From the IMG/VR virus record IMGVR_UViG_3300021963_000021, positions 186,001-250,000 of that record: a stretch of 64,000 nucleotides of DNA. One strand, written 5' to 3'. Shown here piece by piece: positions 5,887 to 51,855 of the stretch. The stretch's first letter is position 1, and every line of letters begins with the position of its first letter. The notes beneath the pieces are model-generated. The model worked only from the letters and a program-made list of their open reading frames with translations. It searched no databases and was not told the DNA's origin. The position numbers and the translations under genes are program-made.

Positions 5887-6122
5887 TATTTGTCCTCGGC
5901 TTTCTTAACCTCAGCAGAGTCTGCTTTAACAGCACGTGGATTTCTAGCGTAGTAATCATTCATAATTTCTTCGCGAGTCTTTACGACTCTTCCACCTGCG
6001 CCTAGCTCGTCACCACGAGCATTTACACGAACATTACCCACTGCTGGAGTTAGTTCGTTAACTAGGGCTAGTTTTTCCATATCAACTTCTTTGCCCTGCA
6101 TGCTTTTATAAGTTCTACCCAT
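5886..6122 (-). CDS. hypothetical protein
   Basis: 78-aa coupled ORF with RBS. Confidence 0.55.
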   Translation of the reverse strand: MGRTYKSMQGKEVDMEKLALVNELTPAVGNVRVNARGDELGAGGRVVKTREEIMNDYYARNPRAVKADSAEVKKAEDK

Positions 6123-6597
6123 TATTTCCTCCTTTGAAGAATTCTTCTATTGGCAAGCTATATTTAATACTATCGATCTTATGTACCCCTATCAAATAGA
6201 GTACGTAACTGGCTACTGAACTACCTCGACCTACACCCCAAACTATGTTATTAGCTCTAAGGGTATCAACTAGGTATTTTATAGCTTTTAGCACGTCGAT
6301 CATTTCGTGCTGCTTATATAGATTTATCTCATCTATTAATCTTTGATAATTTTCTTTTGGACATTTTTCAATAAGGAACGCTTCTATATCCATGTCCTGA
6401 TAATCTTTTGGAATAAACCAATCTCTGTTTTTTGGAATTTCAGTAACAGGCATTGGATAGGTTAACTTTTCATCAAAGCAGCGTTTGATATAAAGTTCTA
6501 GGTCGTTGGAAATCTCAGATACTATAGCACCTTCAATGGCGCTAGGACCTCGTTTAAGTATACCGATTATTAGGTCTTGATCTGTATTACTGAACAT
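6115..6597 (-). CDS. DNA polymerase III alpha (DnaE)-like fragment
   Basis: Y.RL..E, GVGRGSSVASYVLYLIGVHKIDSIKY matches the DnaE GxGRGSxxGSxxxYxLGITxxDP motif; only 160 aa. Confidence 0.75.
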   Translation of the reverse strand: MFSNTDQDLIIGILKRGPSAIEGAIVSEISNDLELYIKRCFDEKLTYPMPVTEIPKNRDWFIPKDYQDMDIEAFLIEKCPKENYQRLIDEINLYKQHEMIDVLKAIKYLVDTLRANNIVWGVGRGSSVASYVLYLIGVHKIDSIKYSLPIEEFFKGGNNG

Positions 6598-36228: not shown

Positions 36229-36259
36229 ATGCTCCTATGCTTAGTTAAACAATACTTAT

Positions 36260-39500: not shown

Positions 39501-39695
39501 TTACTTGGCTTTCGCTTCTTTGCGGGCATTCTTCTCTGCTGTGATTTCATTTCTGCGAGCCTTCACTAGCTTACCTACTTCGGCTAACGCCTTACGTGAA
39601 CGTGTACCTGCTGCTGAGTTACCACCTGTGAACTTGGCATCTTCTGCTAAGAAAGATTCAAATGCTGATTTTAATGCTTCTACTGTGTTTGACAT
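39501..39695 (-). CDS. histone H1-like Hc1 family protein
   Basis: F..E..KF..GN.AAGTR.RKAL.E..K..K..R.EI. Confidence 0.75.
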   Translation of the reverse strand: MSNTVEALKSAFESFLAEDAKFTGGNSAAGTRSRKALAEVGKLVKARRNEITAEKNARKEAKAK

Positions 39696-39738
39696 AATAA
39701 TTCCTTTTGTTTATGTGTCTTTTACTTATGATACTAAT

Positions 39739-39849
39739 TGGTGTGGCCGGTAGGATTCGAACCTACAAAGACGGCGGCTATGCCTGTGTCCCTTTCCCGG
39801 GTGCGTTTCACAACGGACTGGAGGTCTACCATGTTCCACTCACGGCCAC
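39739..39849 (-). ncRNA. tRNA-like RNA (111 nt) lacking a canonical anticodon arm
   Basis: GTGGCCG/CGGCCAC acceptor, A73, CCA, GTAGG-TTCGAAT-CCTAC T arm, Leu-like D arm, 54-nt central insert. Confidence 0.7.
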
Positions 39850-39910
39850 AATAATAGTGTAACACAATACTATGTAGTAGAACAAGACACCGGCATAGAA
39901 ATTATAGCCA

Positions 39911-39935
39911 AAAGAAAGCCCGCCGGAGCGGGCTT
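39911..39935 (-). terminator. intrinsic terminator after ahpD
   Basis: AAGCCCGC-TCCG-GCGGGCTT followed by TCTTTT. Confidence 0.8.
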
Positions 39936-39940
39936 GAGTT

Positions 39941-40453
39941 TTAAGCGTTTAATACTTTTGCCAAACTGTTAATCACTGCGGCAATACGACCAATGTCACG
40001 AAGTTGGTCAACAGAGTAACCTTCCTTCTTGAGTGTTTCATAATGCGCCTTAACACAGAAATGGCACTTGCCAACGATGCTGGCAGCTAGACTATAGGAC
40101 TCAAAACGAGCCTTAGTTGTGCCGCCATGATTAGCAATAGCGTTCATGCGCAGTTGCGGAGGTATACCTTCTAAATCGCCGCCGACCATTTCAACATATG
40201 GGTACCATACATTGTTCTGTGCCATTAGCGAACCTGCGGTCATAGCAGCATCACGTTCTTTCTCATCAGTAATGTTGCTCATGATATAAGAAATTAACTT
40301 TCCGTTACCAGTTGACATAGCAGCGGCAAGTGCGCAACCTTCTGCTTCTTCTACTGGCAGTGTGCTACGTTTGATAACAGCATCCAGATTTAGTTTTGTG
40401 TCCTTGGCATATTCTGGCAAGCCTTCTTTAAGTGCGTCTACCCACTGTGTCAT
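39941..40453 (-). CDS. ahpD: alkylhydroperoxidase AhpD
   Basis: LPEYAKD.KLNL, MAQNNVWY, CHFCVKAH. Confidence 0.9.
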   Translation of the reverse strand: MTQWVDALKEGLPEYAKDTKLNLDAVIKRSTLPVEEAEGCALAAAMSTGNGKLISYIMSNITDEKERDAAMTAGSLMAQNNVWYPYVEMVGGDLEGIPPQLRMNAIANHGGTTKARFESYSLAASIVGKCHFCVKAHYETLKKEGYSVDQLRDIGRIAAVINSLAKVLNA

Positions 40454-40863
40454 CGTGTCTGTTCTCCTAGAATTTTATAACCCTTCCCAGTAGGATGGAT
40501 TCCGTCTTTGCTCATATGTGCTTCAGGCCTTGGAAGAACTGTGTCACCGTATTCTTTAGCAATGCGTTCGATAGCATCTTGAGGTATAGGCTTACGTTCT
40601 TTACCAGGACTGATCCAAAAAACACGATCAGCTTTTATTTCTGATCGCATCTTTCGTAGCTCATGTTCGGTTTTTACACCTTTATGATCGTTGGCACCCA
40701 AACTTACAATTACGGTCTTAGAGGGTTGAGCAGAAGCCTTGGCTAGATAATCTTTATTCCATTGCCAACTATTCCATCCACCTTTAGCATAACTTACACA
40801 TTCGGGACGAGCCATCGAAGTTCCAACTGCGATGCTGTCGCCAATAATCATACAATCGAGCAT
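40450..40863 (-). CDS. SGNH/GDSL hydrolase
   Basis: GDSIA, LGAND, DGIHP...GY. Confidence 0.85.
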   Translation of the reverse strand: MLDCMIIGDSIAVGTSMARPECVSYAKGGWNSWQWNKDYLAKASAQPSKTVIVSLGANDHKGVKTEHELRKMRSEIKADRVFWISPGKERKPIPQDAIERIAKEYGDTVLPRPEAHMSKDGIHPTGKGYKILGEQTR

Positions 40864-41402
40864 TATAGGGTTTCTCCTCCGACTGTGCGGTTACAAGCAC
40901 ATAGTTCGCCAGTTTGTAGCGCATCCAATACACGAAGTGTTTCTTCTGGGCTACGACCAACGTTCAAGTTGTTGACAGTAACGTGTTGGATAACGTTGTC
41001 TGGGTCAACAATGAATGTTGCGCGAAGTGCAGCGCCTGCTGGCCAATAAAACACGCCTAGCTGATGTACCAGACTCTTTTCACTGCGCTGTGTGTCAGCA
41101 AACTGAGTATGTGTGATCTTTTGTAGATCTGCGTGTGCTTTCTGCCATGCTACTTTACAGAACTCATTGTCTGTGCTACCTGTGAGCAATACAGCGTCAC
41201 GGTCAGCAAAGTCTGATGTAAGTTTGTCATAGGCTACGATTTCTGTAGGACATACAAATGTAAAATCCTTTGGGTAGTAAACGATTACTTTCCACTTGCC
41301 TTCAAATGACTTTTCGGTAATGTCAAAGAAAGCATCTTCTGGTTGTCCAGGCTTGACACCTGTGATTACAAACGGTTCTAATTGATCGCCAACTGTTTTC
41401 AT
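40863..41402 (-). CDS. ahpC: peroxiredoxin AhpC (AhpD-partnered type)
   Basis: YPKDFTFVCPTE and GELCACN. Confidence 0.95.
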   Translation of the reverse strand: MKTVGDQLEPFVITGVKPGQPEDAFFDITEKSFEGKWKVIVYYPKDFTFVCPTEIVAYDKLTSDFADRDAVLLTGSTDNEFCKVAWQKAHADLQKITHTQFADTQRSEKSLVHQLGVFYWPAGAALRATFIVDPDNVIQHVTVNNLNVGRSPEETLRVLDALQTGELCACNRTVGGETL

Positions 41403-41537: not shown

Positions 41538-42110
41538 TCAATTACGATCGGTGTAATTGTAGTTGACCATAATGCCCCAACTTTCTTCTAGACGTTTTGA
41601 GCTTTGGTCAGCATTGAAATTCACAGACTGTAATTGAGCACCATTGCCAAGATGGAAACGAGCAACTGGATCTTTGCGTGTTTCTATAAACTCGCGGATC
41701 TGTTCTTCTGTCGGAACTTCGCTAAAATGCTTGCGAAGACTTGGAATAGGACTCAGCGTATATAACTGTTCGATGCCTTCTCTGCGGCAATATCTGAGAG
41801 CTTCTTGTATGATGTCAACGCCCACGCCCGCGGCTGCTCCGGGTAAACGGAACACGGTATAGAACATAGCTACTAGTTTTTGTTGACTTGGAGTTAGTAT
41901 GTCATTGACGCTGCGATTCATATGATCAGAGAGTTTGGCGCAGACTAGTGCCATTGGAGTACCTTGTTCTTCTAACGCAAATACAGTTCGACCGTCTACT
42001 AAACGATCTTCAATGGATATTCCTGGATGTACAGGATCCAATTCTAAAAACTTCAACCATTCTGAGTTAAACCCAGGATCACCAAGACGAACTAACATTT
42101 TATTCTCCAA
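41538..42110 (-). CDS. malonyl-CoA decarboxylase catalytic-domain-like protein
   Basis: TLSPIP, DPVARFHLGNGA, N..AD.S....ESWGIMVNY.Y. Confidence 0.75.
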   Translation of the reverse strand: MENKMLVRLGDPGFNSEWLKFLELDPVHPGISIEDRLVDGRTVFALEEQGTPMALVCAKLSDHMNRSVNDILTPSQQKLVAMFYTVFRLPGAAAGVGVDIIQEALRYCRREGIEQLYTLSPIPSLRKHFSEVPTEEQIREFIETRKDPVARFHLGNGAQLQSVNFNADQSSKRLEESWGIMVNYNYTDRN

Positions 42111-42181: not shown

Positions 42182-42394
42182 TCATTTTGATGATAGCAGA
42201 TCTTGAGCTTGTCGTACTTCGTTTTCTAAGTACTCAATTCTTGCTGCCGCTTCGTCTAACAAAGTGGCTATTTTATCTGGTGCGCCTTCTTCTACGCTCT
42301 TACGACCAGGAATTTGTCTCCTAATTTCAGCTCGCTTACGAAGTCGAAACACCAGACTCTGCTCGCTAACGGGCAGGTGGCTTTCATCTTTCAT
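42182..42394 (-). CDS. hypothetical protein
   Basis: 70-aa coupled ORF. Confidence 0.55.
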   Translation of the reverse strand: MKDESHLPVSEQSLVFRLRKRAEIRRQIPGRKSVEEGAPDKIATLLDEAAARIEYLENEVRQAQDLLSSK

Positions 42395-43281
42395 ATCCTC
42401 TCCATAAAGTTTCTAACCCAGGCCAGACGAGCTTGCTCGTCCATGGCTGTGTATTCAACAATGTTGGCACGGATAGCATCTACTAGTGGATAGTATTCTT
42501 CGTCTAGTTGGTGCTTGATATCTTTGTTCAAGTCCACTAACTTGTCTGTACGTGGATTGCGAGCAACCCATTTTGAAGTCAAGTAGTAAGGGCTCTTGAT
42601 CTTAGCACTCACACCATCTTCTGTATAGAATACATAACCTTCGTGTTTACATTCCTTGGCCATTGCTGATAGTCGTGCCATGTTAGTTGTTACACTTTCT
42701 GGCACAAAGCATCCTAGCACACGACTCATTTCCATTAACATGAACGGATCATGTTCGACTATAGAGTTCCATTTGTTTTCACGATAGCCTAGGATGTACA
42801 TGCCTTCCTTTTCAGGAACGATATGCGGGTCGTTACGGTGAACGCACTCAAACATAAATGTATATCCTTGCCAACGATCACACAAGTCAAAATACTTTGT
42901 TTCGTCGATCAGTTCACGTGCCATTTTAACATAGTCGCTGTCTGTGCTACCAGTAGTAGACACCAACAGTTTGCCGTTATGATAAGTCATAGCAACCATG
43001 AATCCGTTGACTTTACGAAATGCTGTAACTTTGGTTTCTGGAGCAAGCACTGGTGCTTCCTTTTCGATGCCATAGTTATAGATTTTAGTAAATGGGTATG
43101 TCACTAGATTGAAGTCAGTGTCTACAATGGATCCACGACATTCCGCAATAAAGGGATTCCACAGACTATCGTAGAACACTTTCTTCTTGTATTTGAGCAC
43201 GTAGATACCTTCACCAGCTTCTTTCATATTAACTAGGTTGCTGGTTTCTACATACTCCTTCAGCTCATCTTTAAACATCAT
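42391..43281 (-). CDS. T4 Rnl1-like RNA ligase
   Basis: ECRG, FTKIYNY, motif I KVNG, STTGS, FE, EGYV, KIKS.YY. Confidence 0.85.
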   Translation of the reverse strand: MMFKDELKEYVETSNLVNMKEAGEGIYVLKYKKKVFYDSLWNPFIAECRGSIVDTDFNLVTYPFTKIYNYGIEKEAPVLAPETKVTAFRKVNGFMVAMTYHNGKLLVSTTGSTDSDYVKMARELIDETKYFDLCDRWQGYTFMFECVHRNDPHIVPEKEGMYILGYRENKWNSIVEHDPFMLMEMSRVLGCFVPESVTTNMARLSAMAKECKHEGYVFYTEDGVSAKIKSPYYLTSKWVARNPRTDKLVDLNKDIKHQLDEEYYPLVDAIRANIVEYTAMDEQARLAWVRNFMERI

Positions 43282-46110: not shown

Positions 46111-46188
46111 TGGCCTGCCCGGAGGGATTCGAACCCCCGACCCACAGCTTAGAAGGCTGTTGCTCTAATCCTGCTGAGCTACGGGCAG
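46111..46188 (-). tRNA. tRNA-Arg(TCT)
   Basis: Cloverleaf, loop CTTCTAA, CCA. Confidence 0.95.
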
Positions 46189-46193
46189 AAATT

Positions 46194-46269
46194 TGGAGCG
46201 GGAGACGAGTCTCGAACTCGCGACATCTTGCTTGGAAGGCAAGTGCTCTACCAACTGAGCTACTCCCGC
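46194..46269 (-). tRNA. tRNA-Gly(TCC)
   Basis: Loop CTTCCAA, CCA. Confidence 0.95.
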
Positions 46270-46275
46270 AATGTC

Positions 46276-46479
46276 TTAGGTTGGAAAATATTTTTCCATA
46301 ACTTCCAATTTGTCCATATACTCAGCAATCTGAGCGACTTCTTTTTCGATAGCATCCATAATATCACTGTGTTCGTGGATTGCTGTTGGGTTGTTCAGCA
46401 TCACTTCGACATTCATTTTATGTTTAGTGATGTGTGATCGAAAGTGTTCTTTCGATGCTTCAATGAGTTCTTTACGCAT
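46276..46479 (-). CDS. hypothetical protein (start MRKELIE)
   Basis: Coupled to the upstream ORF stop. Confidence 0.55.
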   Translation of the reverse strand: MRKELIEASKEHFRSHITKHKMNVEVMLNNPTAIHEHSDIMDAIEKEVAQIAEYMDKLEVMEKYFPT

Positions 46480-46736
46480 TATGAGTTCACCGTTTCGCTG
46501 TTTTGCTTCGAATTCCACTCTTGTTTGGCCTTTTGATAGGCGTCTTCGCTTAGGCCATGCCAACCAATACAGTCGCCTGTAGGACTACGACCACAACCGC
46601 AAGTACCTTTTTTCATATCTTCAACTTTTGGAGTCACTTTGTCTTTCCTAAAAATTAAATCGTAATTGTTGTTAAACGCTTTCGATGATGCTCTTGATTG
46701 TATAGCATCACCAGTTATATCGTTTCTTGCTACCAT
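46479..46736 (-). CDS. CDGSH-like Fe-S motif protein
   Basis: CGCGRSPTGDCIGWH (3Cys-1His). Confidence 0.55.
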   Translation of the reverse strand: MVARNDITGDAIQSRASSKAFNNNYDLIFRKDKVTPKVEDMKKGTCGCGRSPTGDCIGWHGLSEDAYQKAKQEWNSKQNSETVNS

Positions 46737-46752
46737 CTACATATCCTCAAAT

Positions 46753-46831
46753 TGGTCCGGGAAGTGGGATTCGAACTCACGATCTCCTGCTCCCAAAGCA
46801 GGCGCTTTAAGCCAGACTAAGCTACACCCGG
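46753..46831 (-). tRNA. tRNA-Pro(TGG)
   Basis: Loop TTTGGGA, CCA. Confidence 0.9.
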
Positions 46832-46835
46832 AAAT

Positions 46836-46909
46836 TGGTTGCGGGTCCTGGAATCGAACCAAGGACTAGAGCTTATGAGACTCTCGAGATACCCCTTCTC
46901 CAACCCGCT
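46836..46909 (-). tRNA. tRNA-Met(CAT), initiator-like
   Basis: Loop CTCATAA, unpaired 1:72, fMet-like D arm. Confidence 0.8.
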
Positions 46910-46916
46910 ATAAACC

Positions 46917-47492
46917 TTATAGGATTCCTTCTTTGGTCAGTGTTGCTACTGCTTCATCGCTTAGAGGAATCTCTGTCTTAATGTTAAGTTCAAGGACTTC
47001 GTCATTGATCTTTTGTTTCTGCTTGCGTAGATTGCTAAGTTCAGTCTTGAACTTGTCAATGTCTCCTGTGCTGAGCACAGAAGTGTCTACGGTATCACTG
47101 TAGCCGTAAATGCTACGACGACTAGTTTCGTTCTTGTCGTTGCGTATCTTATCCAACTTGCCGTTGATTACGACCAAGTCAGCGACTGGTGCGTGTCTGA
47201 CCATTGCTTCTAGCTGACTGATACGCTTGTCAATGAAAGCCGCACGAGTCAACAACAGGTCGATTCCGCTCTGGGCGTTTGCCGCACCTACTAGGCCGCG
47301 GATGTTATATTGCGCAGCCAACAACAGGCCACGACGCTGATCGTTTTCCAACAGCTTCTTGTTGGCAGCATCAATTTCGGCCTTTGCGTCCTGGAACTCA
47401 TTAAGCTGGACATCCAACTTAATATCGATATTTTTCAAAGCATCGCTGATGCTGTTCTGGACTACGTTTGCTTTACGAAGAGTGATGTTCAT
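46917..47492 (-). CDS. hypothetical coiled-coil protein
   Basis: 191 aa with its own promoter and AAGGA RBS. Confidence 0.65.
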   Translation of the reverse strand: MNITLRKANVVQNSISDALKNIDIKLDVQLNEFQDAKAEIDAANKKLLENDQRRGLLLAAQYNIRGLVGAANAQSGIDLLLTRAAFIDKRISQLEAMVRHAPVADLVVINGKLDKIRNDKNETSRRSIYGYSDTVDTSVLSTGDIDKFKTELSNLRKQKQKINDEVLELNIKTEIPLSDEAVATLTKEGIL

Positions 47493-47515
47493 GTGTTTTT
47501 CCTTATGATTTATCT

Positions 47516-47544
47516 ATTATACTGCCTTGACATGCTGTTGTCAA
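47516..47544 (-). promoter_or_regulatory. sigma70 promoter TTGACA-N17-TATAAT
   Basis: Perfect consensus. Confidence 0.8.
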
Positions 47545-47545
47545 C

Positions 47546-47816
47546 AAAAAAATGACGGATCGGTAAAAGGTCAAGTAATAGACCGGACAATAGACAGTGG
47601 AAGGTTTGTAATCTTCCTATGACAATGTACAAGGTACAAAGCACAGAGGTCTATATATTTCCGATTAACAAATGACATTCTATTAGGGATCGGATCACAT
47701 AAACACGGACAGTTTTCAAGACTGTTTGCGTTAAGTTCGGATTAGGCTTGGAGCCTAAGCCATTTTGTCCATCCTCATCTACCTTTTACTTCACCGGCTA
47801 GTTTTAATAAACTAGC
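47546..47816 (-). ncRNA. candidate structured ncRNA (about 270 nt)
   Basis: Nested long-range stems and several hairpins; no ORF on the minus strand. Confidence 0.5.
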
Positions 47817-47821
47817 AAAAC

Positions 47822-47897
47822 TGGTGCCGGTTGTCGGATTCGAACTGACCACATCCGCCTTACAAGAGCGGCGCTCTACCTAATGAGCTAAACCGGC
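47822..47897 (-). tRNA. tRNA-Thr(TGT)
   Basis: Loop CTTGTAA, CCA. Confidence 0.95.
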
Positions 47898-47920
47898 ATA
47901 AAACTATATATCAAACAACT

Positions 47921-48012
47921 TGGCGGAGATAGTTGGATTCGAACCAACGGTAGAGTTTAACCCCTACGACGGTTTAGCAAACCGCTGCCTTCAGCCACTC
48001 AGCCATATCTCC
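47921..48012 (-). tRNA. tRNA-Ser(GCT)
   Basis: Loop TTGCTAA, long variable arm. Confidence 0.95.
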
Positions 48013-48016
48013 GTAT

Positions 48017-48106
48017 TGGCGGAAGCGGTGAGATTCGAACTCACGGAACATTTCTGTTCGTCGGTTTTCAAGACCGGTGCAATCAGCCAGACTCTGCCAC
48101 ACTTCC
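48017..48106 (-). tRNA. tRNA-Ser(TGA)
   Basis: Loop CTTGAAA, long variable arm. Confidence 0.95.
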
Positions 48107-48111
48107 ATAAA

Positions 48112-48187
48112 TGGTAGGTCCTGACAGTCTCGAACTGCCGACATCCGCCGTGTAAAGGCGGCGCTCTACCAACTGAGCTAAGGACCC
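48112..48187 (-). tRNA. tRNA-Val(TAC)
   Basis: Loop TTTACAC, CCA. Confidence 0.95.
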
Positions 48188-48269
48188 AAAAGATCTATTC
48201 TGAAACACACTGGCTGTTGCTTGTCATTGTCTTTAACTACCTCTCGGTGGCGGTAGACCAATGTGTTTT

Positions 48270-49165
48270 AGAATAGTGTTAAGACTGAGATTACATCTTA
48301 ACCATAAGCACCTCTAGCATTACCGTACACCTTGCGAGCATACGTTCTCTAGATATCCACTGAGCCCTATTGCTAGGTATCCCAGTCTGCTTACAGTATC
48401 GCCGTTTTAAGTCAGGCAGTAGACTTGACGCCATATGCTATTCTACACCATCTATCCCGTTAACCTTGCGAGCTATTCGAGTGCGCTAACACTCTACGAA
48501 ACTTCCAGTATAAACTAATGTCACCTTGCGAGCTTCATTAGACTTGATTGTGTTACCACTCAAGTATTAGATACTTTTCACATATGACCGAGGCAGTCTT
48601 TGCGTTTTTGTTTAATGGCTGGAGTTGAACCAGCAACATTCTGTTTAATAGACAGACGATCTACCATTGATCTACATTGCAACCTACCGTGATGAGCTAC
48701 CTCTGTTGCTGTATACTCTTTTGGAATACACAATACAACTCACCACATACCTTTCCTCTCGCGGAGTAATCAGTGATGTTTCACGACCAGTGTCCTGCGT
48801 CAAAACAGTCCACCGCCCATTTACATTGCGCTAAAGCCCTTAGGAGCGACCCCTCGGACAATAACACTACCCTTTCTCATACCAGTTAATAAGTTGGTTT
48901 TGTATGGAAGTCAGCACCACCTGTTACTTTTCACGCACCCTGGTTCCCTTGCGGGCCAGTCGATACGCATTCTTCCCCATACACTTACTTGGCTGTTACA
49001 TCCACCGGTTTTGTCAGTGAACGCATCCTCACGGATGTGAGCAGGCTTGTTTACACGAACCATTGCTGGCGCTAGTATGTAGGCATTCTAGCTTTGGGTC
49101 GATCGCTCGACTTATTCTTCGTAGACGGCGGACCGCCTACAGGATGATAAACCACCCTAGAATTT
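48270..49165 (-). ncRNA. large structured ncRNA, GOLLD-like
   Basis: About 0.9 kb with no long ORF inside a tRNA array; repeated GCAA-capped hairpins and long-range stems. Confidence 0.55.
48611..48681 (-). pseudogene. tRNA-like domain (anticodon ATT) embedded in the large ncRNA
   Basis: Perfect D, anticodon and T arms; two acceptor mismatches; no CCA. Confidence 0.7.
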
Positions 49166-49251
49166 TTAAACCATATAAAAACACACTCACGGACATGGCT
49201 TGTTGGATGCAGCCTGCCTAACCGAACCAACTTCGGCAGTGTGTTTTTATA

Positions 49252-49335
49252 TGGTGCCCCAACCGAGACTTGAACTCGGACGCACTAGGCACTGGCTTCT
49301 AAGACCAGCGTGTCTACCAATTCCACCATCGGGGC
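49252..49335 (-). tRNA. tRNA-Leu(TAG)
   Basis: Loop CTTAGAA, long variable arm. Confidence 0.95.
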
Positions 49336-49393
49336 AATGTTTGTCTAACAATGTTAAAGAGCGTTACGCTGTTTTGTTTAACAGCATATGTAT

Positions 49394-49422
49394 ATTATAT
49401 CTTCTAACTGCCGCTGTGTCAA
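49394..49422 (-). promoter_or_regulatory. internal sigma70 promoter TTGACA-N17-TATAAT
   Basis: Perfect consensus upstream of tRNA-Leu(TAG) and the large ncRNA. Confidence 0.8.
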
Positions 49423-49452
49423 CACATTCTGGACATATTAGAAAATATTTTT

Positions 49453-49526
49453 TGGTGCCCAGACCAAGAATTGAACTTGGAATAATCGCTTATCAAGCGA
49501 CCGTTATACCATTTAACTATCCGGGC
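49453..49526 (-). tRNA. tRNA-Ile(GAT)
   Basis: Loop TTGATAA, CCA. Confidence 0.93.
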
Positions 49527-49535
49527 ATATTGAAT

Positions 49536-49750
49536 TTGTTGTAGTAGTGCCACCATCGTTATTGGCACCATTCACCTGGATTAACAAAGCCCGGGCAGGA
49601 CTCGGTACGTCACTTGGGATACTAGTCCAGTTAGCAACCAATCTGCGCCGATCTTCCGATCAGCCGGGAGTTGAACCCGTCCCCTTCTACTATTTCGGTA
49701 GTTCGAACTTACCTAGATAGCGTGACATTCTCTTGCTGACACTACAACAA
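49536..49750 (-). ncRNA. candidate structured ncRNA (215 nt)
   Basis: 10-bp terminal stem, two T-loop-like hairpins, GGAA tetraloop. Confidence 0.55.
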
Positions 49751-49754
49751 AACT

Positions 49755-49829
49755 TGGCTCCCCAGGGTGGGATCGAACCACCGACAAACGGATTAACAGT
49801 CCGCTACTCTACCTCTGAGCTACTAGGGA
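49755..49829 (-). tRNA. tRNA-Asn(GTT)
   Basis: Loop CTGTTAA. Confidence 0.95.
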
Positions 49830-49835
49830 ATAAAT

Positions 49836-49910
49836 TGGTGGAGGATAGCGGAATCGAACCGCTGACTCAAGCGTGCAAGGCTAGTGTTTTCCCAATTAGA
49901 CTAATCCCCC
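49836..49910 (-). tRNA. tRNA-Ala(TGC)
   Basis: Loop CTTGCAC. Confidence 0.93.
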
Positions 49911-49914
49911 AAAT

Positions 49915-49990
49915 TGGCGCCTCGTAGGGGAGTCGAACCCCTGTGTTCCGCTAGACAGGCGGGCATAATAGACCGTTATATGAACGAGGC
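49915..49990 (-). tRNA. tRNA-Asp(GTC)
   Basis: Loop CTGTCTA. Confidence 0.92.
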
Positions 49991-50000
49991 AAAACTTGTT

Positions 50001-50076
50001 TGGTAGCAGTAGTTGGACTCGAACCAACGATAAACACCGTATGAAGGTGCCGCATTAGCCGCTATGCTATACTGCC
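50001..50076 (-). tRNA. tRNA(CAT), elongator Met or Ile2
   Basis: Loop TTCATAC, paired acceptor. Confidence 0.85.
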
Positions 50077-50080
50077 ATAT

Positions 50081-50225
50081 CCATTTAGAAGTAACACAGT
50101 TTACTATTCTCTTGCTACCGAATGTGTAGTACCTTACAGGTCTACGTTACTAGTATCATCGGCTTTCCGCTTCGAACAAGGTTAGGTCTGATCATGACCC
50201 GACGAGCTGTGTTACTACTAAATGG
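50081..50225 (-). ncRNA. candidate structured ncRNA (145 nt)
   Basis: 18-bp terminal stem with one mismatch; multibranch interior. Confidence 0.55.
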
Positions 50226-50228
50226 TAA

Positions 50229-50305
50229 TGGTGTGCCCTCTGGGATTCGAACCCAGGACCCTCTGATTAAAAGTCAGATGCTCTAACCTACTGAGCTAAG
50301 GGCAC
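50229..50305 (-). tRNA. tRNA-Lys(TTT)
   Basis: Loop CTTTTAA. Confidence 0.95.
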
Positions 50306-50360
50306 AATCGTTTACCAGATTTACCATCATCTCCCATGGTAATTTCCTCCTTAAAAAACT

Positions 50361-50436
<76 letters not shown>

Positions 50437-50442
50437 ATTATA

Positions 50443-50518
50443 TGGTACACGGTACGGGAATCGAACCCGTCTTTCCGCCTTGAAAGGGCAGCGTCCTCAA
50501 CCGATAGACGAACCGTGC
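50443..50518 (-). tRNA. tRNA-Glu(TTC)
   Basis: Loop CTTTCAA. Confidence 0.95.
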
Positions 50519-50546
50519 GTAAAAAATTTTCAATTGTCAAAGAACG

Positions 50547-50623
50547 TGGAGCACAGGGTGGGACTCGAACCCACGAATCAACAGTTTTGCAGACTGCGCC
50601 ATTGGCCTCTCTGGTACCTGTGC
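50547..50623 (-). tRNA. tRNA-Cys(GCA)
   Basis: Loop CTGCAAA, U73. Confidence 0.95.
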
Positions 50624-50637
50624 GTTAAAGTCTATCA

Positions 50638-50666
50638 AGTATATGATAAATCAAACAGCTTGTCAA
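50638..50666 (-). promoter_or_regulatory. internal sigma70 promoter TTGACA-N17-TATACT
   Basis: Near-consensus, upstream of tRNA-Cys. Confidence 0.75.
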
Positions 50667-50751
50667 CTACTATTTTAGGTTTTTGTCGATGATGATCATC
50701 AAAACCGCTAACATGATTAGAACTGCCAATGCCCCATGTGAGTCTCCTTGT

Positions 50752-50825
50752 TGGTGCTCTAGCCAAGAATTGAACTTGAAATTCAGTCTTACCAAGACTG
50801 TGTTATACCATTTAACTACAAGAGC
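50752..50825 (-). tRNA. tRNA-Thr(GGT)
   Basis: Loop TTGGTAA. Confidence 0.93.
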
Positions 50826-50826
50826 A

Positions 50827-50905
50827 TGGTACCCCTGCTCAGATTTGAACTGAGAACAACTTCTCCTTTTGAGAGAGACGACTTTACCAATTTGTCCACA
50901 GGGGC
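50827..50905 (-). tRNA. tRNA-Leu(CAA), short variable arm
   Basis: Loop CTCAAAA; variable region of only about 7 nt. Confidence 0.8.
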
Positions 50906-50911
50906 ATACTT

Positions 50912-50987
50912 TGGTGCTGCCTCCTGGGATCGAACCAGGTTCCTCGGTTCTTCAGACCGGTGCTATGACCACATCAGCTAAAGCAGC
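50912..50987 (-). tRNA. tRNA-Phe(GAA)
   Basis: Loop CTGAAGA. Confidence 0.93.
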
Positions 50988-50997
50988 ATTTAATCTT

Positions 50998-51072
50998 TGG
51001 TGGATCTTGTAGGATTTGAACCTACGACCAACAGCGTGTCGAGCTGCTACTCTACCACTGAGCTAAAGATCC
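50998..51072 (-). tRNA. tRNA-Val(GAC)
   Basis: Loop TCGACAC. Confidence 0.9.
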
Positions 51073-51073
51073 T

Positions 51074-51147
51074 TGGGGTGAAACCGGGAATCGAACCCTG
51101 TCTACCTGTTTCACAGACAGGTGTGCGACCACTACACTAGTAACACC
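51074..51147 (-). tRNA. tRNA-His(GTG)
   Basis: Loop CTGTGAA, G-1:C73; some stem mismatches. Confidence 0.85.
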
Positions 51148-51152
51148 ATTAT

Positions 51153-51229
51153 TGGCCGGCCCGGAGAGACTCGAACTCCCAACCTCTAGTTTCGAAGACT
51201 AGCACTCTAATCCATTGAGTTACGGACCG
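51153..51229 (-). tRNA. tRNA-Arg(TCG)
   Basis: Loop CTTCGAA. Confidence 0.93.
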
Positions 51230-51235
51230 ATAACT

Positions 51236-51309
51236 TGGCTGGGGATGATGGATTCGAACCACCACAGACGGAATCAAAATCCGTAGTCCTACCATTAGAC
51301 GAATCCCCA
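51236..51309 (-). tRNA. tRNA-Gln(TTG)
   Basis: Loop TTTTGAT. Confidence 0.93.
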
Positions 51310-51313
51310 ATAT

Positions 51314-51387
51314 TGGCACCGGACCAGAGACTCGAACTCCGACGAACGGTTTTGGAGACCGTCATGCTGCCATTACATCAGCCCGAT
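51314..51387 (-). tRNA. tRNA-Trp(CCA)
   Basis: Loop CTCCAAA; D stem ATGT/GCAT gives U11:A24. Confidence 0.93.
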
Positions 51388-51388
51388 A

Positions 51389-51742
51389 TTATTTGATTGT
51401 GTCGTACCGAGTATCTTCGGTTTCGATAAAGTTGACCATTCCAACAGAGATATGATATCCTTCTGTTTTCATAGCTTGATATGCTTTTTGATACACGTCT
51501 GATTCTAAGAGATTCTTTTGAAAATCTCTAGCTTTAAACATGTCTTTAGAAAAGAAGTAGACGTTTTCTACTTGTGTTGTAGCATCCCAATCCCATGACT
51601 GCTTATCTTCTATAAGCCCTTGTTCTACACAGTCTTTTAGAAACGCAACGAATTCTAAGGAGATATCTTCTCTAAAGTTGATATCATCTTGGGTCTGAAA
51701 TTCAGCTCCGTAGTAAATTTGCTGTATTTGTGTAGCTATCAT
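51389..51742 (-). CDS. hypothetical protein inside the tRNA array
   Basis: 117 aa, AAGGA RBS, TAAATA motif upstream. Confidence 0.55.
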   Translation of the reverse strand: MIATQIQQIYYGAEFQTQDDINFREDISLEFVAFLKDCVEQGLIEDKQSWDWDATTQVENVYFFSKDMFKARDFQKNLLESDVYQKAYQAMKTEGYHISVGMVNFIETEDTRYDTIK

Positions 51743-51768
51743 GATTGGGATCCTTTTAGCTATTTATC

Positions 51769-51855
51769 TGGTGGAGGAAGTAAGATTCGAACCTACTAGT
51801 CCCTAAGAAAACAGATTTACAGTCTGCCGCACCCCTCCAACTGTGCCGTTCCTCC
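51769..51855 (-). tRNA. tRNA-Tyr(GTA)
   Basis: Loop CTGTAAA, long variable arm. Confidence 0.95.

What the first reader, a model, noticed from the sequence alone, without database searches (positions are those of the whole stretch)
39739..39849. Orphan tRNA-like RNA with its anticodon arm replaced by a branched domain
It has a perfect 7-bp acceptor, A73, CCA and T arm, and a D arm (GTGGAACATGGTAGAC) close to that of tRNA-Leu(TAG) in this genome. The central 54 nt form small hairpins (GTG/CAC, CCC/GGG, GGC/GCC) with no 7-nt anticodon loop. Leucylation depends little on the anticodon, so it could be a chargeable non-decoding tRNA, a nuclease decoy or an intron-containing tRNA. It lies apart from the main array, upstream of the Hc1-like gene.
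Basis: partly seen in the sequence, partly recalled or inferred. Interest (0 to 1): 0.65.

Follow-up and report, generated by a model that had tools for sequence, protein, structure and literature searches.

The report
Phage tRNA-Leu look-alike without anticodon
Freshwater T4-like phages carry a conserved small RNA gene whose product looks like a leucine tRNA, except that the anticodon arm is a long capped rod, so the cell can probably handle it as a tRNA but it cannot read codons; what it does is unknown.

Summary
The feature is real. It lies on the minus strand at 39849-39739, 111 nt. It is not an orphan: pattern scans found it in at least 176 IMG/VR viral contigs as 79 distinct variants, once per large contig. 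Two pattern scans of about 185,000 bacterial and archaeal genomes found nothing. Comparative analysis supports a five-arm cloverleaf:
- a 7-bp acceptor stem with A73 and an encoded CCA;
- a tRNA-Leu-type D arm;
- a 5-bp T arm;
- a long variable arm ending in an NUA triloop;
- in place of the anticodon arm, an irregular rod of about 9-10 bp.

95% of cells pair, and 16 of 32 pairs show compensatory changes. The rod tip is GNRA in 51 of 79 variants (GUGA here). Other subfamilies have YCAUA, CUAG or other loops, so the tip is not an anticodon. A sigma-70-type promoter places +1 at G1. In 109 of 114 loci an Hc1-like gene starts about 45 nt downstream. ARAGORN does not call it, and Rfam's tRNA model scores 25.6 bits against a cut-off of 29.

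My best reading is a trans-acting, non-decoding tRNA-Leu mimic that LeuRS can probably charge. Decoy and cis-leader roles remain open. The intron and pseudogene readings are rejected. It appears to be an undescribed family.

The parts
39739..39849 (-). The whole tRNA-like RNA, 111 nt (RNA position i = window 39850 - i).
   Evidence: Covariance model R1 scores it at 123.8 bits, E = 2e-29, and it is the only copy in the 364-kb genome. Rfam tRNA gives 25.6 bits against a cut-off of 29. ARAGORN is silent.
39843..39849 (-). Acceptor stem, 5' strand (G1-G7).
   Evidence: Pairs with 39743-39749. 99.8% of cells pair, and pairs 5:68 and 6:67 covary.
39822..39840 (-). D arm: stem A10-U28 and G11-C27 (plus U12.C26), loop GGAACAUGGUAGA carrying G18G19.
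   Evidence: A-U and G-C are invariant in 79 of 79 variants. The third pair is C-G in the 11 variants with the other D-arm type. The loop is of tRNA-Leu type.
39797..39821 (-). Long arm that replaces the anticodon arm: CC/GG closure, bulge, GU/AC, C.C mismatch, then CGUU/AACG.
   Evidence: 8 of its 9 modelled pairs show compensatory changes, and 92.6% of cells pair. RNAalifold predicts the same helix.
39808..39811 (-). GUGA tetraloop (GNRA) capping the long arm.
   Evidence: GNRA in 51 of 79 variants, with the N and R positions varying freely. Other subfamilies have YCAUA, CUAG and other loops.
39793..39796 (-). Linker G-AAA between the long arm and the variable arm.
   Evidence: The G is conserved and the following 2-4 nt vary.
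39768..39792 (-). Long variable arm: 5-bp outer helix, 3x3 A/C-rich internal loop, GGC/GCC inner helix, AUA triloop (39779-39781).
   Evidence: The helices pair in 98.7% and 99.6% of cells, and both covary. The internal loop is non-Watson-Crick in 49 of 50 variants and fully paired in L028. The triloop is NUA in 78 of 79 variants.
39750..39766 (-). T arm GUAGG-UUCGAAU-CCUAC.
   Evidence: 100% paired, with one covarying pair, U-A to C-G.
39739..39749 (-). Acceptor stem 3' strand (39743-39749), discriminator A73 (39742) and encoded CCA (39739-39741).
   Evidence: ACCA is invariant in all variants.
39856..39885 (-). Promoter-like site: TTGTTC, 18-nt spacer, TGT-TACACT, with G1 as the 7th base after the -10 hexamer.
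   Evidence: It is weak in the window and the consensus scanner does not call it. The same register carries near-consensus TTGAC/TTGCA-17-TATAAT in 30+ homologous loci, always 6 nt before G1.
39916..39935 (-). Intrinsic terminator of the upstream AhpD-like gene, which separates the RNA from upstream transcription.
   Evidence: 8-bp GC-rich stem followed by a T run.
39723..39729 (-). Conserved ATAAGTA motif in the 43-nt spacer between CCA and the Hc1-like start codon.
   Evidence: Present 10-15 nt after CCA in nearly all loci, including L011, where the downstream gene differs. It resembles a T4-type late promoter (TATAAATA), but that is inference only.
39501..39695 (-). Hc1-like histone H1-like protein gene (64 aa), the usual downstream neighbour.
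   Evidence: PF07432, 48.3 bits. An Hc1-like gene follows the RNA in 109 of 114 loci.

Best explanation
This is a genuine single-copy gene of a clade of uncultured freshwater T4-like phages. It encodes a small RNA of about 101-116 nt that mimics the 'top half' and variable arm of a class II tRNA-Leu. The anticodon arm is replaced by a stable, irregular helix of about 9-10 bp capped by a tetraloop, so the RNA cannot decode.

Proposed mechanism:
1. Host RNA polymerase starts at G1 from a sigma-70-type promoter, so there is no leader and no need for RNase P (inferred from the conserved spacing).
2. Transcription runs on into the downstream gene, usually hc1-like (inferred).
3. Host tRNA 3'-end processing frees the RNA at its encoded CCA (inferred).
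4. The folded L-shape presents an acceptor stem, A73-CCA, an elbow and a variable arm that host tRNA-handling proteins accept. The likeliest is leucyl-tRNA synthetase, whose known identity elements all lie outside the anticodon and are all conserved here.
5. The RNA then acts in trans as a non-decoding carrier or competitor, charged or chargeable, and not as an adaptor in translation.

Shown here: the gene, the fold, the lack of an anticodon, the promoter register, the synteny and the restriction to viruses. Inferred: the processing, the charging and the downstream role.
For: - Family size and copy number: at least 176 IMG/VR contigs and 79 distinct variants; one copy per large contig.
- Fold: on a MAFFT alignment of 50 variants, 94.7% of cells pair against 30-45% when partners are slid, and 10 pairs carry compensatory changes (0 of 500 shuffles reach this). 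On 79 variants the figures are 95.0%, 16 of 32 pairs and 209 cells.
- Sequence constraint sits in the top half: G1-G4, G7, U8, A10, G11, G18G19, the T arm and ACCA are invariant, while both central arms change by compensation.
- No anticodon: the tip is GNRA with free N and R, or a different loop in other subfamilies.
- Leucine type: both D-arm versions in the family match the two D-arm types of phage tRNA-Leu isoacceptors. Model R1's best ordinary tRNAs are tRNA-Leu in T4 (34 bits), G003 (39 and 35.9 bits) and G001 (36.5 bits). The E. coli tRNA-Leu identity set (A73, A14, A15-U48, G18G19/U55C56, U54-A58; PMC6614811) is conserved.
- Own promoter: TTGAC-17-TATAAT ends 6 nt before G1 in about 30 distinct upstream sequences.
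- tRNA-like handling: in L009 the RNA heads a tRNA operon, 5 nt before tRNA-Arg.
- Independence from hc1: L011, L090, L101, L107 and L009 have other downstream genes.
Against: - There is no direct evidence of transcription ends, processing or charging. Metatranscriptome data were contigs only; they span the region without showing ends or strand and may include DNA.
- In the window's own genome R1's best ordinary tRNAs are Lys (29.6 bits) and Ser (26.5 bits), not Leu.
- The window's promoter is weak: 7 of 12 consensus matches, not called by the scanner.
- For this single sequence the comparative fold evaluates at -28.9 kcal/mol against an MFE of -38.1, and the MFE z-score is only -1.09.
- LeuRS does not need the rod or the NUA triloop, so charging alone does not explain why they are conserved.
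- The phage encodes no LeuRS, L/F-transferase, CCA-adding enzyme or Ro protein that would point to a partner.
- The near-constant position in the hc1 leader also fits a cis role.
Confidence: 0.5

Rival explanations
1. Decoy or sponge. The RNA is a bait for a host tRNA-targeting defence or toxin that recognises the tRNA body, variable arm or CCA end rather than the anticodon. Examples from my own knowledge are enzymes that modify or extend tRNA 3' ends, and nucleases that cut the acceptor stem. The rod makes the bait immune to anticodon nucleases and keeps it out of the ribosome. Charging is not needed.
For: - Restricted to viruses.
- The phage invests heavily in tRNA biology: 28 tRNAs and an Rnl1-type RNA ligase 2.5 kb away.
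- The anticodon loop has been removed in several independent ways while the top half is frozen.
- Early-type promoter.
- Phage tRNAs are already argued to counter tRNA-targeting defences (PMC10264068).
Against: - No defence system is known that a body-only tRNA-Leu mimic would neutralise.
- The precise conservation of the leucine-type identity set is more than a generic CCA-end bait would need.
- One copy from one promoter is a modest dose for a sponge.
- Nothing here tests binding.
Confidence: 0.22
2. Cis-acting leader module. The tRNA-like fold is the 5' end of the hc1-like mRNA. It works there as a 5'-end stabiliser, or as a processing signal whose cleavage by tRNA 3'-end enzymes sets the mRNA's 5' end and hence its stability or translation. 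This would time the expression of a DNA-condensing protein.
For: - The RNA ends about 45 nt before the hc1-like start codon in 109 of 114 loci.
- In RNA-less relatives (L150, L151, L156, L179) the same promoter block sits directly in front of a short hc1 leader, so the RNA looks like an insertion into that leader.
- No terminator lies between the RNA and hc1.
- Only 44 of the 80 closest hc1 loci have the RNA, so it behaves as an optional module.
Against: - The module also occurs in front of unrelated genes (L011, L090, L101, L107) and at the head of a tRNA operon (L009).
- A simple hairpin would stabilise a 5' end. Full conservation of A73-CCA, the elbow nucleotides and a Leu-type D loop points to tRNA-specific partners.
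- The synteny may only reflect how closely related these phages are.
Confidence: 0.18
3. A decoding tRNA in disguise: either an intron-containing tRNA that is spliced to a normal tRNA, or, in the YCAUA subfamily, a CAU-anticodon tRNA with an extended arm.
For: In subfamily B the tip can be drawn as a 5-bp stem with a 7-nt loop C-Y-C-A-U-A-G, which resembles a Met/Ile2 anticodon loop.
Against: - In the window's subfamily the loop is a 4-nt GNRA whose variable letters would spell six or more different anticodons on one unchanged body.
- 54 nt is far too short for a group I intron, and no intron family matched.
- There are no 3-nt bulges of a bulge-helix-bulge site.
- The bases flanking any possible excision covary as pairs.
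- Even in subfamily B the loop sits 4-5 bp further from the elbow than an anticodon. One variant has UAU instead of CAU.
Confidence: 0.03
4. A decaying tRNA pseudogene with no function.
For: It scores below Rfam's tRNA threshold and ARAGORN does not call it. One 5'-truncated copy exists (L021).
Against: 79 variants keep every helix through compensatory changes, keep the promoter register, and keep invariant tertiary-contact nucleotides and ACCA.
Confidence: 0.02

Closest known systems
Class II tRNA-Leu (bacterial and phage)
   Same: 7-bp acceptor stem, A73-CCA, 3-bp D stem with a Leu-type D loop (both known phage versions), A15/U48, G18G19, T arm and T loop, and a long variable arm. Model R1's best ordinary tRNA hits are tRNA-Leu in three of four other genomes.
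   Different: No 5-bp anticodon stem with a 7-nt loop and no Leu anticodon. Instead there is a rod of about 9-10 bp with a 3-6-nt cap. The variable arm is longer (25 nt) and has a 3x3 internal loop. It scores below the Rfam tRNA threshold.
Phage T4 species 1 RNA (rnaC), and rnaD
   Same: A small stable RNA of a T4-type phage with a tRNA-like T arm (CCGGG-UUCGAAU-CCCGG) and paired ends. Its function is still unknown (PMC9697503).
   Different: rnaC is 139 nt, lies inside the tRNA cluster, has no encoded CCA in the record, and has an imperfect acceptor stem. R1 aligns only part of it, at 21 bits, so homology is not shown.
tRNA-like domain of tmRNA
   Same: An acceptor stem, T arm and reduced D region without an anticodon arm. 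It is charged by a synthetase that ignores the anticodon (my own knowledge).
   Different: tmRNA has G3.U70 for AlaRS, pseudoknots and a tag reading frame, and is more than 250 nt long. Here pair 3:70 is G-C, there is no ORF, and ARAGORN finds no tmRNA.
Minimal tRNA-Leu substrates of E. coli LeuRS
   Same: From my own knowledge (Larkin et al. 2002, not read here), transcripts lacking the anticodon and variable arms are still leucylated. PMC6614811 lists only identity elements outside the anticodon. This RNA is a natural molecule of that design.
   Different: Those are laboratory constructs. This RNA keeps a variable arm and adds a rod, and its charging is untested.
YrlA / bacterial Y RNA with Ro (Rsr)
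   Same: A non-coding RNA with a tRNA-like module. It is also found in some jumbo phages (PMC7824862).
   Different: In YrlA the 5' and 3' ends form the Ro-binding stem rather than an acceptor stem with CCA. There is no Rfam match here and no TROVE gene in the genome.
mascRNA and plant-virus tRNA-like structures
   Same: tRNA mimics that are cut out or used by tRNA enzymes and do not decode (my own knowledge).
   Different: They are eukaryotic or RNA-virus elements at 3' ends, with different folds. There is no sequence or model match.

Membership tests
Canonical tRNA (Rfam RF00005 / ARAGORN) | Scores at or above the family's gathering threshold and is called by a tRNA finder. | tested here: not met
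   25.6 bits against 29, with only the acceptor stem and T arm aligned. ARAGORN tRNAs in the window but not this one, and none of the homologues tested.
Canonical tRNA (Rfam RF00005 / ARAGORN) | A 5-bp anticodon stem with a 7-nt loop (U33, anticodon, R37) at the standard distance from the elbow. | tested here: not met
   The arm is about 9-10 bp with a GNRA tetraloop. The loop letters vary on a constant body.
Canonical tRNA (Rfam RF00005 / ARAGORN) | 7-bp acceptor stem, 5-bp T stem with a 7-nt T loop, discriminator plus CCA, and the elbow nucleotides U8, A14, G18G19, U54-U55-C56, A58. | tested here: met
   All are present and invariant or nearly so in 79 variants.
tRNA-Leu (class II) | Identity elements used by bacterial LeuRS: A73, A14, A15-U48, G18G19/U55C56, U54-A58 (PMC6614811). 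| tested here: met
   Conserved at the sequence level. This shows the elements are present, not that they are recognised.
tRNA-Leu (class II) | A leucine anticodon (NAG or NAA). | tested here: not met
   There is no anticodon loop.
tRNA-Leu (class II) | Leucylation by LeuRS. | not testable with these tools
   This needs an aminoacylation assay.
tmRNA | G3.U70, a tag-peptide reading frame and pseudoknots. | tested here: not met
   Pair 3:70 is G-C in 79 of 79 variants. The RNA is 111 nt with no ORF. ARAGORN finds no tmRNA, and no tmRNA family matched at the loose threshold.
Intron-containing tRNA (group I intron or bulge-helix-bulge) | An excisable insert whose removal leaves a conserved anticodon loop, plus an intron core or two 3-nt bulges around a 4-bp helix. 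| tested here: not met
   No intron family matched. The insert would be 54 nt. The flanking bases covary as pairs, and no triplet is conserved.
T4 rnaC (species 1 RNA) | Alignable sequence and structure over the whole RNA. | tested here: inconclusive
   R1 hits L070:1907-2001 at 21.2 bits, no better than ordinary tRNAs. Only the T arm is clearly shared.
YrlA / Y RNA | A Ro-binding stem formed by the two ends, and a Ro/TROVE partner gene. | tested here: not met
   No Rfam match, and no TROVE domain in the 364-kb genome.

The most novel reading that the evidence does not exclude
Phages have evolved a dedicated non-decoding aminoacyl carrier or mimic. It has a tRNA-Leu body that host LeuRS charges, and a swappable rod tip (GNRA, a CAU anticodon-like loop, CUAG). 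During infection it either delivers leucine to a non-ribosomal acceptor or titrates a host tRNA-sensing factor such as LeuRS, EF-Tu, a defence enzyme that attacks the CCA end, or the ribosomal E site. That would make it a new functional class of viral tRNA mimic in bacteria.
Probability: 0.3. Interest if true: 0.85.

Novelty: new variant of a known kind. Interest (0 to 1): 0.66.

Why it matters
Phage tRNA genes are now seen as weapons in conflicts over the host's tRNA pool, but every case understood so far is a decoding tRNA. This is an abundant, strongly conserved, virus-only RNA. It keeps everything a synthetase or processing enzyme reads on a tRNA-Leu and has deliberately lost the part the ribosome and anticodon nucleases read.

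If it is charged, it would be a natural counterpart of the minimal tRNA-Leu substrates built in the laboratory, and a handle on non-translational uses of aminoacyl-tRNA during infection. If it is a decoy, it points to a host factor that attacks or senses the tRNA body.

It also gives T4's 50-year-old unexplained species 1 RNA a much better-defined analogue, with 79 natural variants for structure-function work. On the practical side, tRNA finders and Rfam miss it, so it goes unannotated in hundreds of viral contigs.

Tried and rejected
- Cultured phages: blastn of 901 nt around the RNA against 50,697 phage records found nothing. The closest cultured carrier of the Hc1-like gene, Synechococcus phage S-SRM01, has no copy anywhere in its genome.
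- Cellular genomes: two pattern scans of about 185,000 species genomes found no cellular copy and no ordinary tRNA sharing the 3' half. These were exact-pattern scans, so distant relatives could be missed.
- Partner genes in the 364-kb genome: no CCA-adding enzyme, TROVE/Ro, class Ia synthetase or L/F-transferase.
- Expression: six metatranscriptomic runs hold parts of the region. Four were laid on it, but they are assembled contigs and give no ends, strand or proof of transcription. I treat this as inconclusive.
- T4 rnaC/rnaD homology: not supported.
- Treating the 3x3 loop of the variable arm as Watson-Crick pairs: only 8.8% of cells pair.
- E. coli L/F-transferase preference (G3:C70, C72, A4:U69, C68; PMC4105747): only G3:C70 and C72 match, so this gives no support.
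- A hairpin after the CCA: present in some loci but not conserved, whereas the ATAAGTA sequence is.
- Literature: six full-text searches found no description of this RNA. A 2023 catalogue of about 8,500 IMG/VR RNA candidates (PMC10690425) may contain it, but its tables are not held.

Full report
**What is in the sequence**

The feature lies on the minus strand, from G1 at 39849 to A111 at 39739. It reads GUGGCCG-UG-AGU-GGAACAUGGUAGA-CCU-CC-AGU-C-CGUU-GUGA-AACG-C-ACC-C-GG-G-AAA-GGGAC-ACA-GGC-AUA-GCC-GCC-GUCUU-U-GUAGG-UUCGAAU-CCUAC-CGGCCAC-A-CCA.

ARAGORN finds 28 ordinary tRNAs at 46.1-51.9 kb but not this one. Rfam release 15 gives nothing above threshold. At a loose threshold the tRNA model aligns only the acceptor stem and T arm, at 25.6 bits (cut-off 29, E = 0.003), and no other family comes near. 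The single-sequence fold is unremarkable, with a z-score of -1.09. The case therefore rests on comparison with relatives.

**It is a large family, not an orphan**

- The exact 28-mer of the T arm plus the 3' acceptor strand occurs in 13 IMG/VR contigs.
- A pattern from the central domain finds 67 contigs.
- A variant with a different T loop finds 56 more.

Together these give at least 176 contigs and 79 distinct sequences of 101-116 nt. Model R1, built from 50 of them, scores all 79 at 71-132 bits. It finds exactly one copy in the window's 364-kb genome (123.8 bits), where every other hit is an ordinary tRNA at 30 bits or less. It also finds one copy in each of three other large contigs.

Two pattern scans of about 185,000 bacterial and archaeal species genomes found nothing. 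The cultured-phage collection has no match. The genome is T4-like, with Gp23 at 272 bits. Near-identical DNA occurs in many freshwater metagenomes from 16 studies.

**The fold**

I tested a five-arm cloverleaf on a plain MAFFT alignment of 50 variants. It pairs in 94.7% of cells, against 30-45% when the 3' partners are slid by 1-3 columns. Ten pairs carry changes on both sides, and no shuffle in 500 reaches this. RNAalifold independently predicts the same central helices. On all 79 variants the figures are 95.0% of cells paired, 16 of 32 pairs with compensatory changes, and 209 such cells. That alignment was fitted to the model and so leans towards it.

The arms are:
- Acceptor stem: 7 bp, with pairs 5:68 and 6:67 covarying.
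- D stem: A10-U and G11-C invariant. The third pair is U.C in most variants and C-G in the 11 variants with the alternative D arm.
- Long arm: a CC/GG closure, a bulge, 3 bp, a mismatch or bulge, 4-5 bp and a cap. Eight of its nine modelled pairs covary.
- Variable arm: a 5-bp outer helix, a 3x3 A/C-rich internal loop, a 3-4-bp inner helix and a triloop. The internal loop pairs in only 8.8% of cells, yet it is fully Watson-Crick in L028, so it is helical.
- T arm: 5 bp with UUCGAAU or UUCGAAA.

For the window's sequence alone the comparative fold scores -28.9 kcal/mol against an MFE of -38.1. This is a caveat, although energy models ignore tRNA tertiary contacts.

**There is no anticodon**

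If the window's tip were read as a 7-nt loop UUGNRAA, it would spell GUG, GAG, GCA, GCG, GGG, GUA or GAA on one near-identical body. That is the signature of a GNRA tetraloop, not of an anticodon.

GNRA caps 51 of 79 variants. A second subfamily has a covarying 5-6-bp stem with loop Y-C-A-U-A, once C-U-A-U-A. A third has CUAG, and single variants have UUUUU, UUAAUU or AUUGUA. In every case the loop sits on a helix about twice the length of an anticodon stem.

The most conserved loop in the centre is the NUA triloop of the variable arm, present in 78 of 79 variants. The intron reading is rejected because the insert is too short, no intron family matched, there is no bulge-helix-bulge, and the flanking bases covary as pairs. 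The pseudogene reading is refuted by the covariation.

**It is leucine-like**

- The window's D region matches its own tRNA-Leu(UAG).
- The family's two D-arm versions (GUGGAAU-UGGYAGAC and GCAAAUUGGCAAAGC) correspond to the two D-arm types seen in phage tRNA-Leu(UAG) and tRNA-Leu(UAA/CAA).
- R1's best ordinary tRNA is tRNA-Leu in T4 (34 bits), in G003 (Leu-UAA 39 bits, Leu-GAG 35.9 bits) and in G001 (Leu-UAG 36.5 bits, then Tyr 29.6 bits).
- In the window's own genome, however, the best are Lys and Ser.
- The E. coli tRNA-Leu identity set quoted in PMC6614811 (A73, A14, A15-U48, G18G19/U55C56, U54-A58) contains nothing from the anticodon, and every element is conserved here.

**Transcription and context**

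In about 30 distinct upstream sequences a near-consensus TTGAC/TTGCA-17-TATAAT promoter ends exactly 6 nt before G1. The RNA is therefore probably made without a leader, carrying a 5' triphosphate. The window's version, TTGTTC-18-(TG)TACACT, is weaker, and the consensus scanner does not call it. The scanner does find the terminator of the upstream AhpD-like gene at 39935-39916.

An Hc1-like gene (PF07432) starts about 45 nt after the CCA in 109 of 114 loci. A conserved ATAAGTA motif lies in between. Of the 80 closest Hc1-like loci in IMG/VR, 44 carry the RNA. Some RNA-less loci have the same promoter block directly before a short hc1 leader. The RNA therefore behaves as an optional module inside that leader.

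The module also occurs before unrelated genes (L011, L090, L101, L107). In the most divergent member (L009, 101 nt) it sits 5 nt upstream of tRNA-Arg(CCU) at the head of a tRNA operon. L021 is a copy that has lost its promoter and its first 25 nt or so.

Metatranscriptome assemblies from three studies cover the RNA. They are contigs that also span the neighbouring genes, so they prove neither transcription nor ends.

**Interpretation**

Sequence-level constraint is concentrated in the parts that tRNA-handling proteins contact: the acceptor stem, A73-CCA, the elbow and the T arm. The two central arms are constrained only in shape.

I therefore read this as a trans-acting tRNA-Leu mimic. It would be made early from its own promoter and released by host 3' processing. 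It is probably accepted by LeuRS, and it is excluded from decoding. Replacement of the anticodon loop would also make it immune to anticodon nucleases.

Whether it works as a charged carrier, as a competitor or decoy for a host factor, or mainly in cis on the downstream mRNA cannot be decided here. I give these readings about 0.5, 0.22 and 0.18. The phage itself encodes no LeuRS, L/F-transferase, CCA-adding enzyme or Ro protein. An Rnl1-type RNA ligase lies 2.5 kb away.

**Comparison with known RNAs, and novelty**

The nearest known things are:
- class II tRNA-Leu, which has the same top half but whose defining anticodon arm is absent here;
- T4's species 1 RNA (rnaC), a tRNA-like stable RNA of a T4-type phage whose function is still unknown (PMC9697503). 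R1 gives it only 21 bits, so it is an analogue and not a shown homologue;
- the tRNA-like domain of tmRNA, which has the same logic but whose G3.U70, tag ORF and size are not met;
- YrlA, for which there is no match and no Ro gene.

Six full-text searches found no description of this RNA, and Rfam 15 has no model for it. I rate it a new variant of a known kind: a phage-encoded tRNA mimic with a defined architecture that has not, to my knowledge, been described.

Noticed in passing
window 48282-48746 (-): A full-length GOLLD RNA (RF02032, 211.6 bits) sits inside the tRNA array. A tRNA is nested in it, called tRNA-Asn with the unusual anticodon AUU at 48610-48681 by ARAGORN and scored at 54.9 bits by Rfam's tRNA model.
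   Followed up: no
window 46111-51855 (-): An array of 28 tRNA genes, nearly all with an encoded CCA. They cover most amino acids and include two Met(CAU), two Leu and two Ser.
   Followed up: partly
window 42391-43281 (-): A T4 Rnl1-type RNA ligase (PF09511, 47 bits), the enzyme family that repairs cut tRNA anticodon loops, lies 2.5 kb from the tRNA-like RNA.
   Followed up: no
window 39941-41402 (-): A phage-borne peroxide-defence pair: an AhpC/TSA peroxiredoxin (40863-41402) and an AhpD-like CMD protein (39941-40453), with a GDSL hydrolase between them. A protein with a malonyl-CoA decarboxylase C-terminal domain lies at 41538-42110.
   Followed up: no
L185, L140, L147, L160, L217-L219 and L222 (e.g. 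L185:1345-1457): A subfamily of the RNA whose long arm ends in a 5-bp stem and the loop C-Y-C-A-U-A-G. This looks like a Met/Ile2 (CAU) anticodon loop mounted on a 4-bp extension. One variant (L236) has UAU instead.
   Followed up: partly
window 39723-39729 (-), and the same place in about 100 loci: An ATAAGTA motif is conserved 10-15 nt after the CCA and travels with the RNA even when the downstream gene differs. A second copy about 30 nt upstream of a start codon at 36259 suggests a late-promoter-like element.
   Followed up: partly
L021 (about 6100-6200, - strand): A copy of the RNA in which the promoter and the first 25 nt or so are replaced by the upstream terminator sequence. This is a deletion derivative or an assembly chimera.
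   Followed up: no
about 50-60 nt upstream of the RNA in most loci: A conserved block CTGCTAATATTTAAC lies next to a divergent radical-SAM gene present in 50 loci. It may be the promoter of that gene.
   Followed up: no
window 39304 and 39361: Metatranscriptome and metagenome contigs of a close relative carry a 21-nt in-frame insertion and a 3-nt deletion in the repetitive 181-aa gene downstream of hc1.
   Followed up: no
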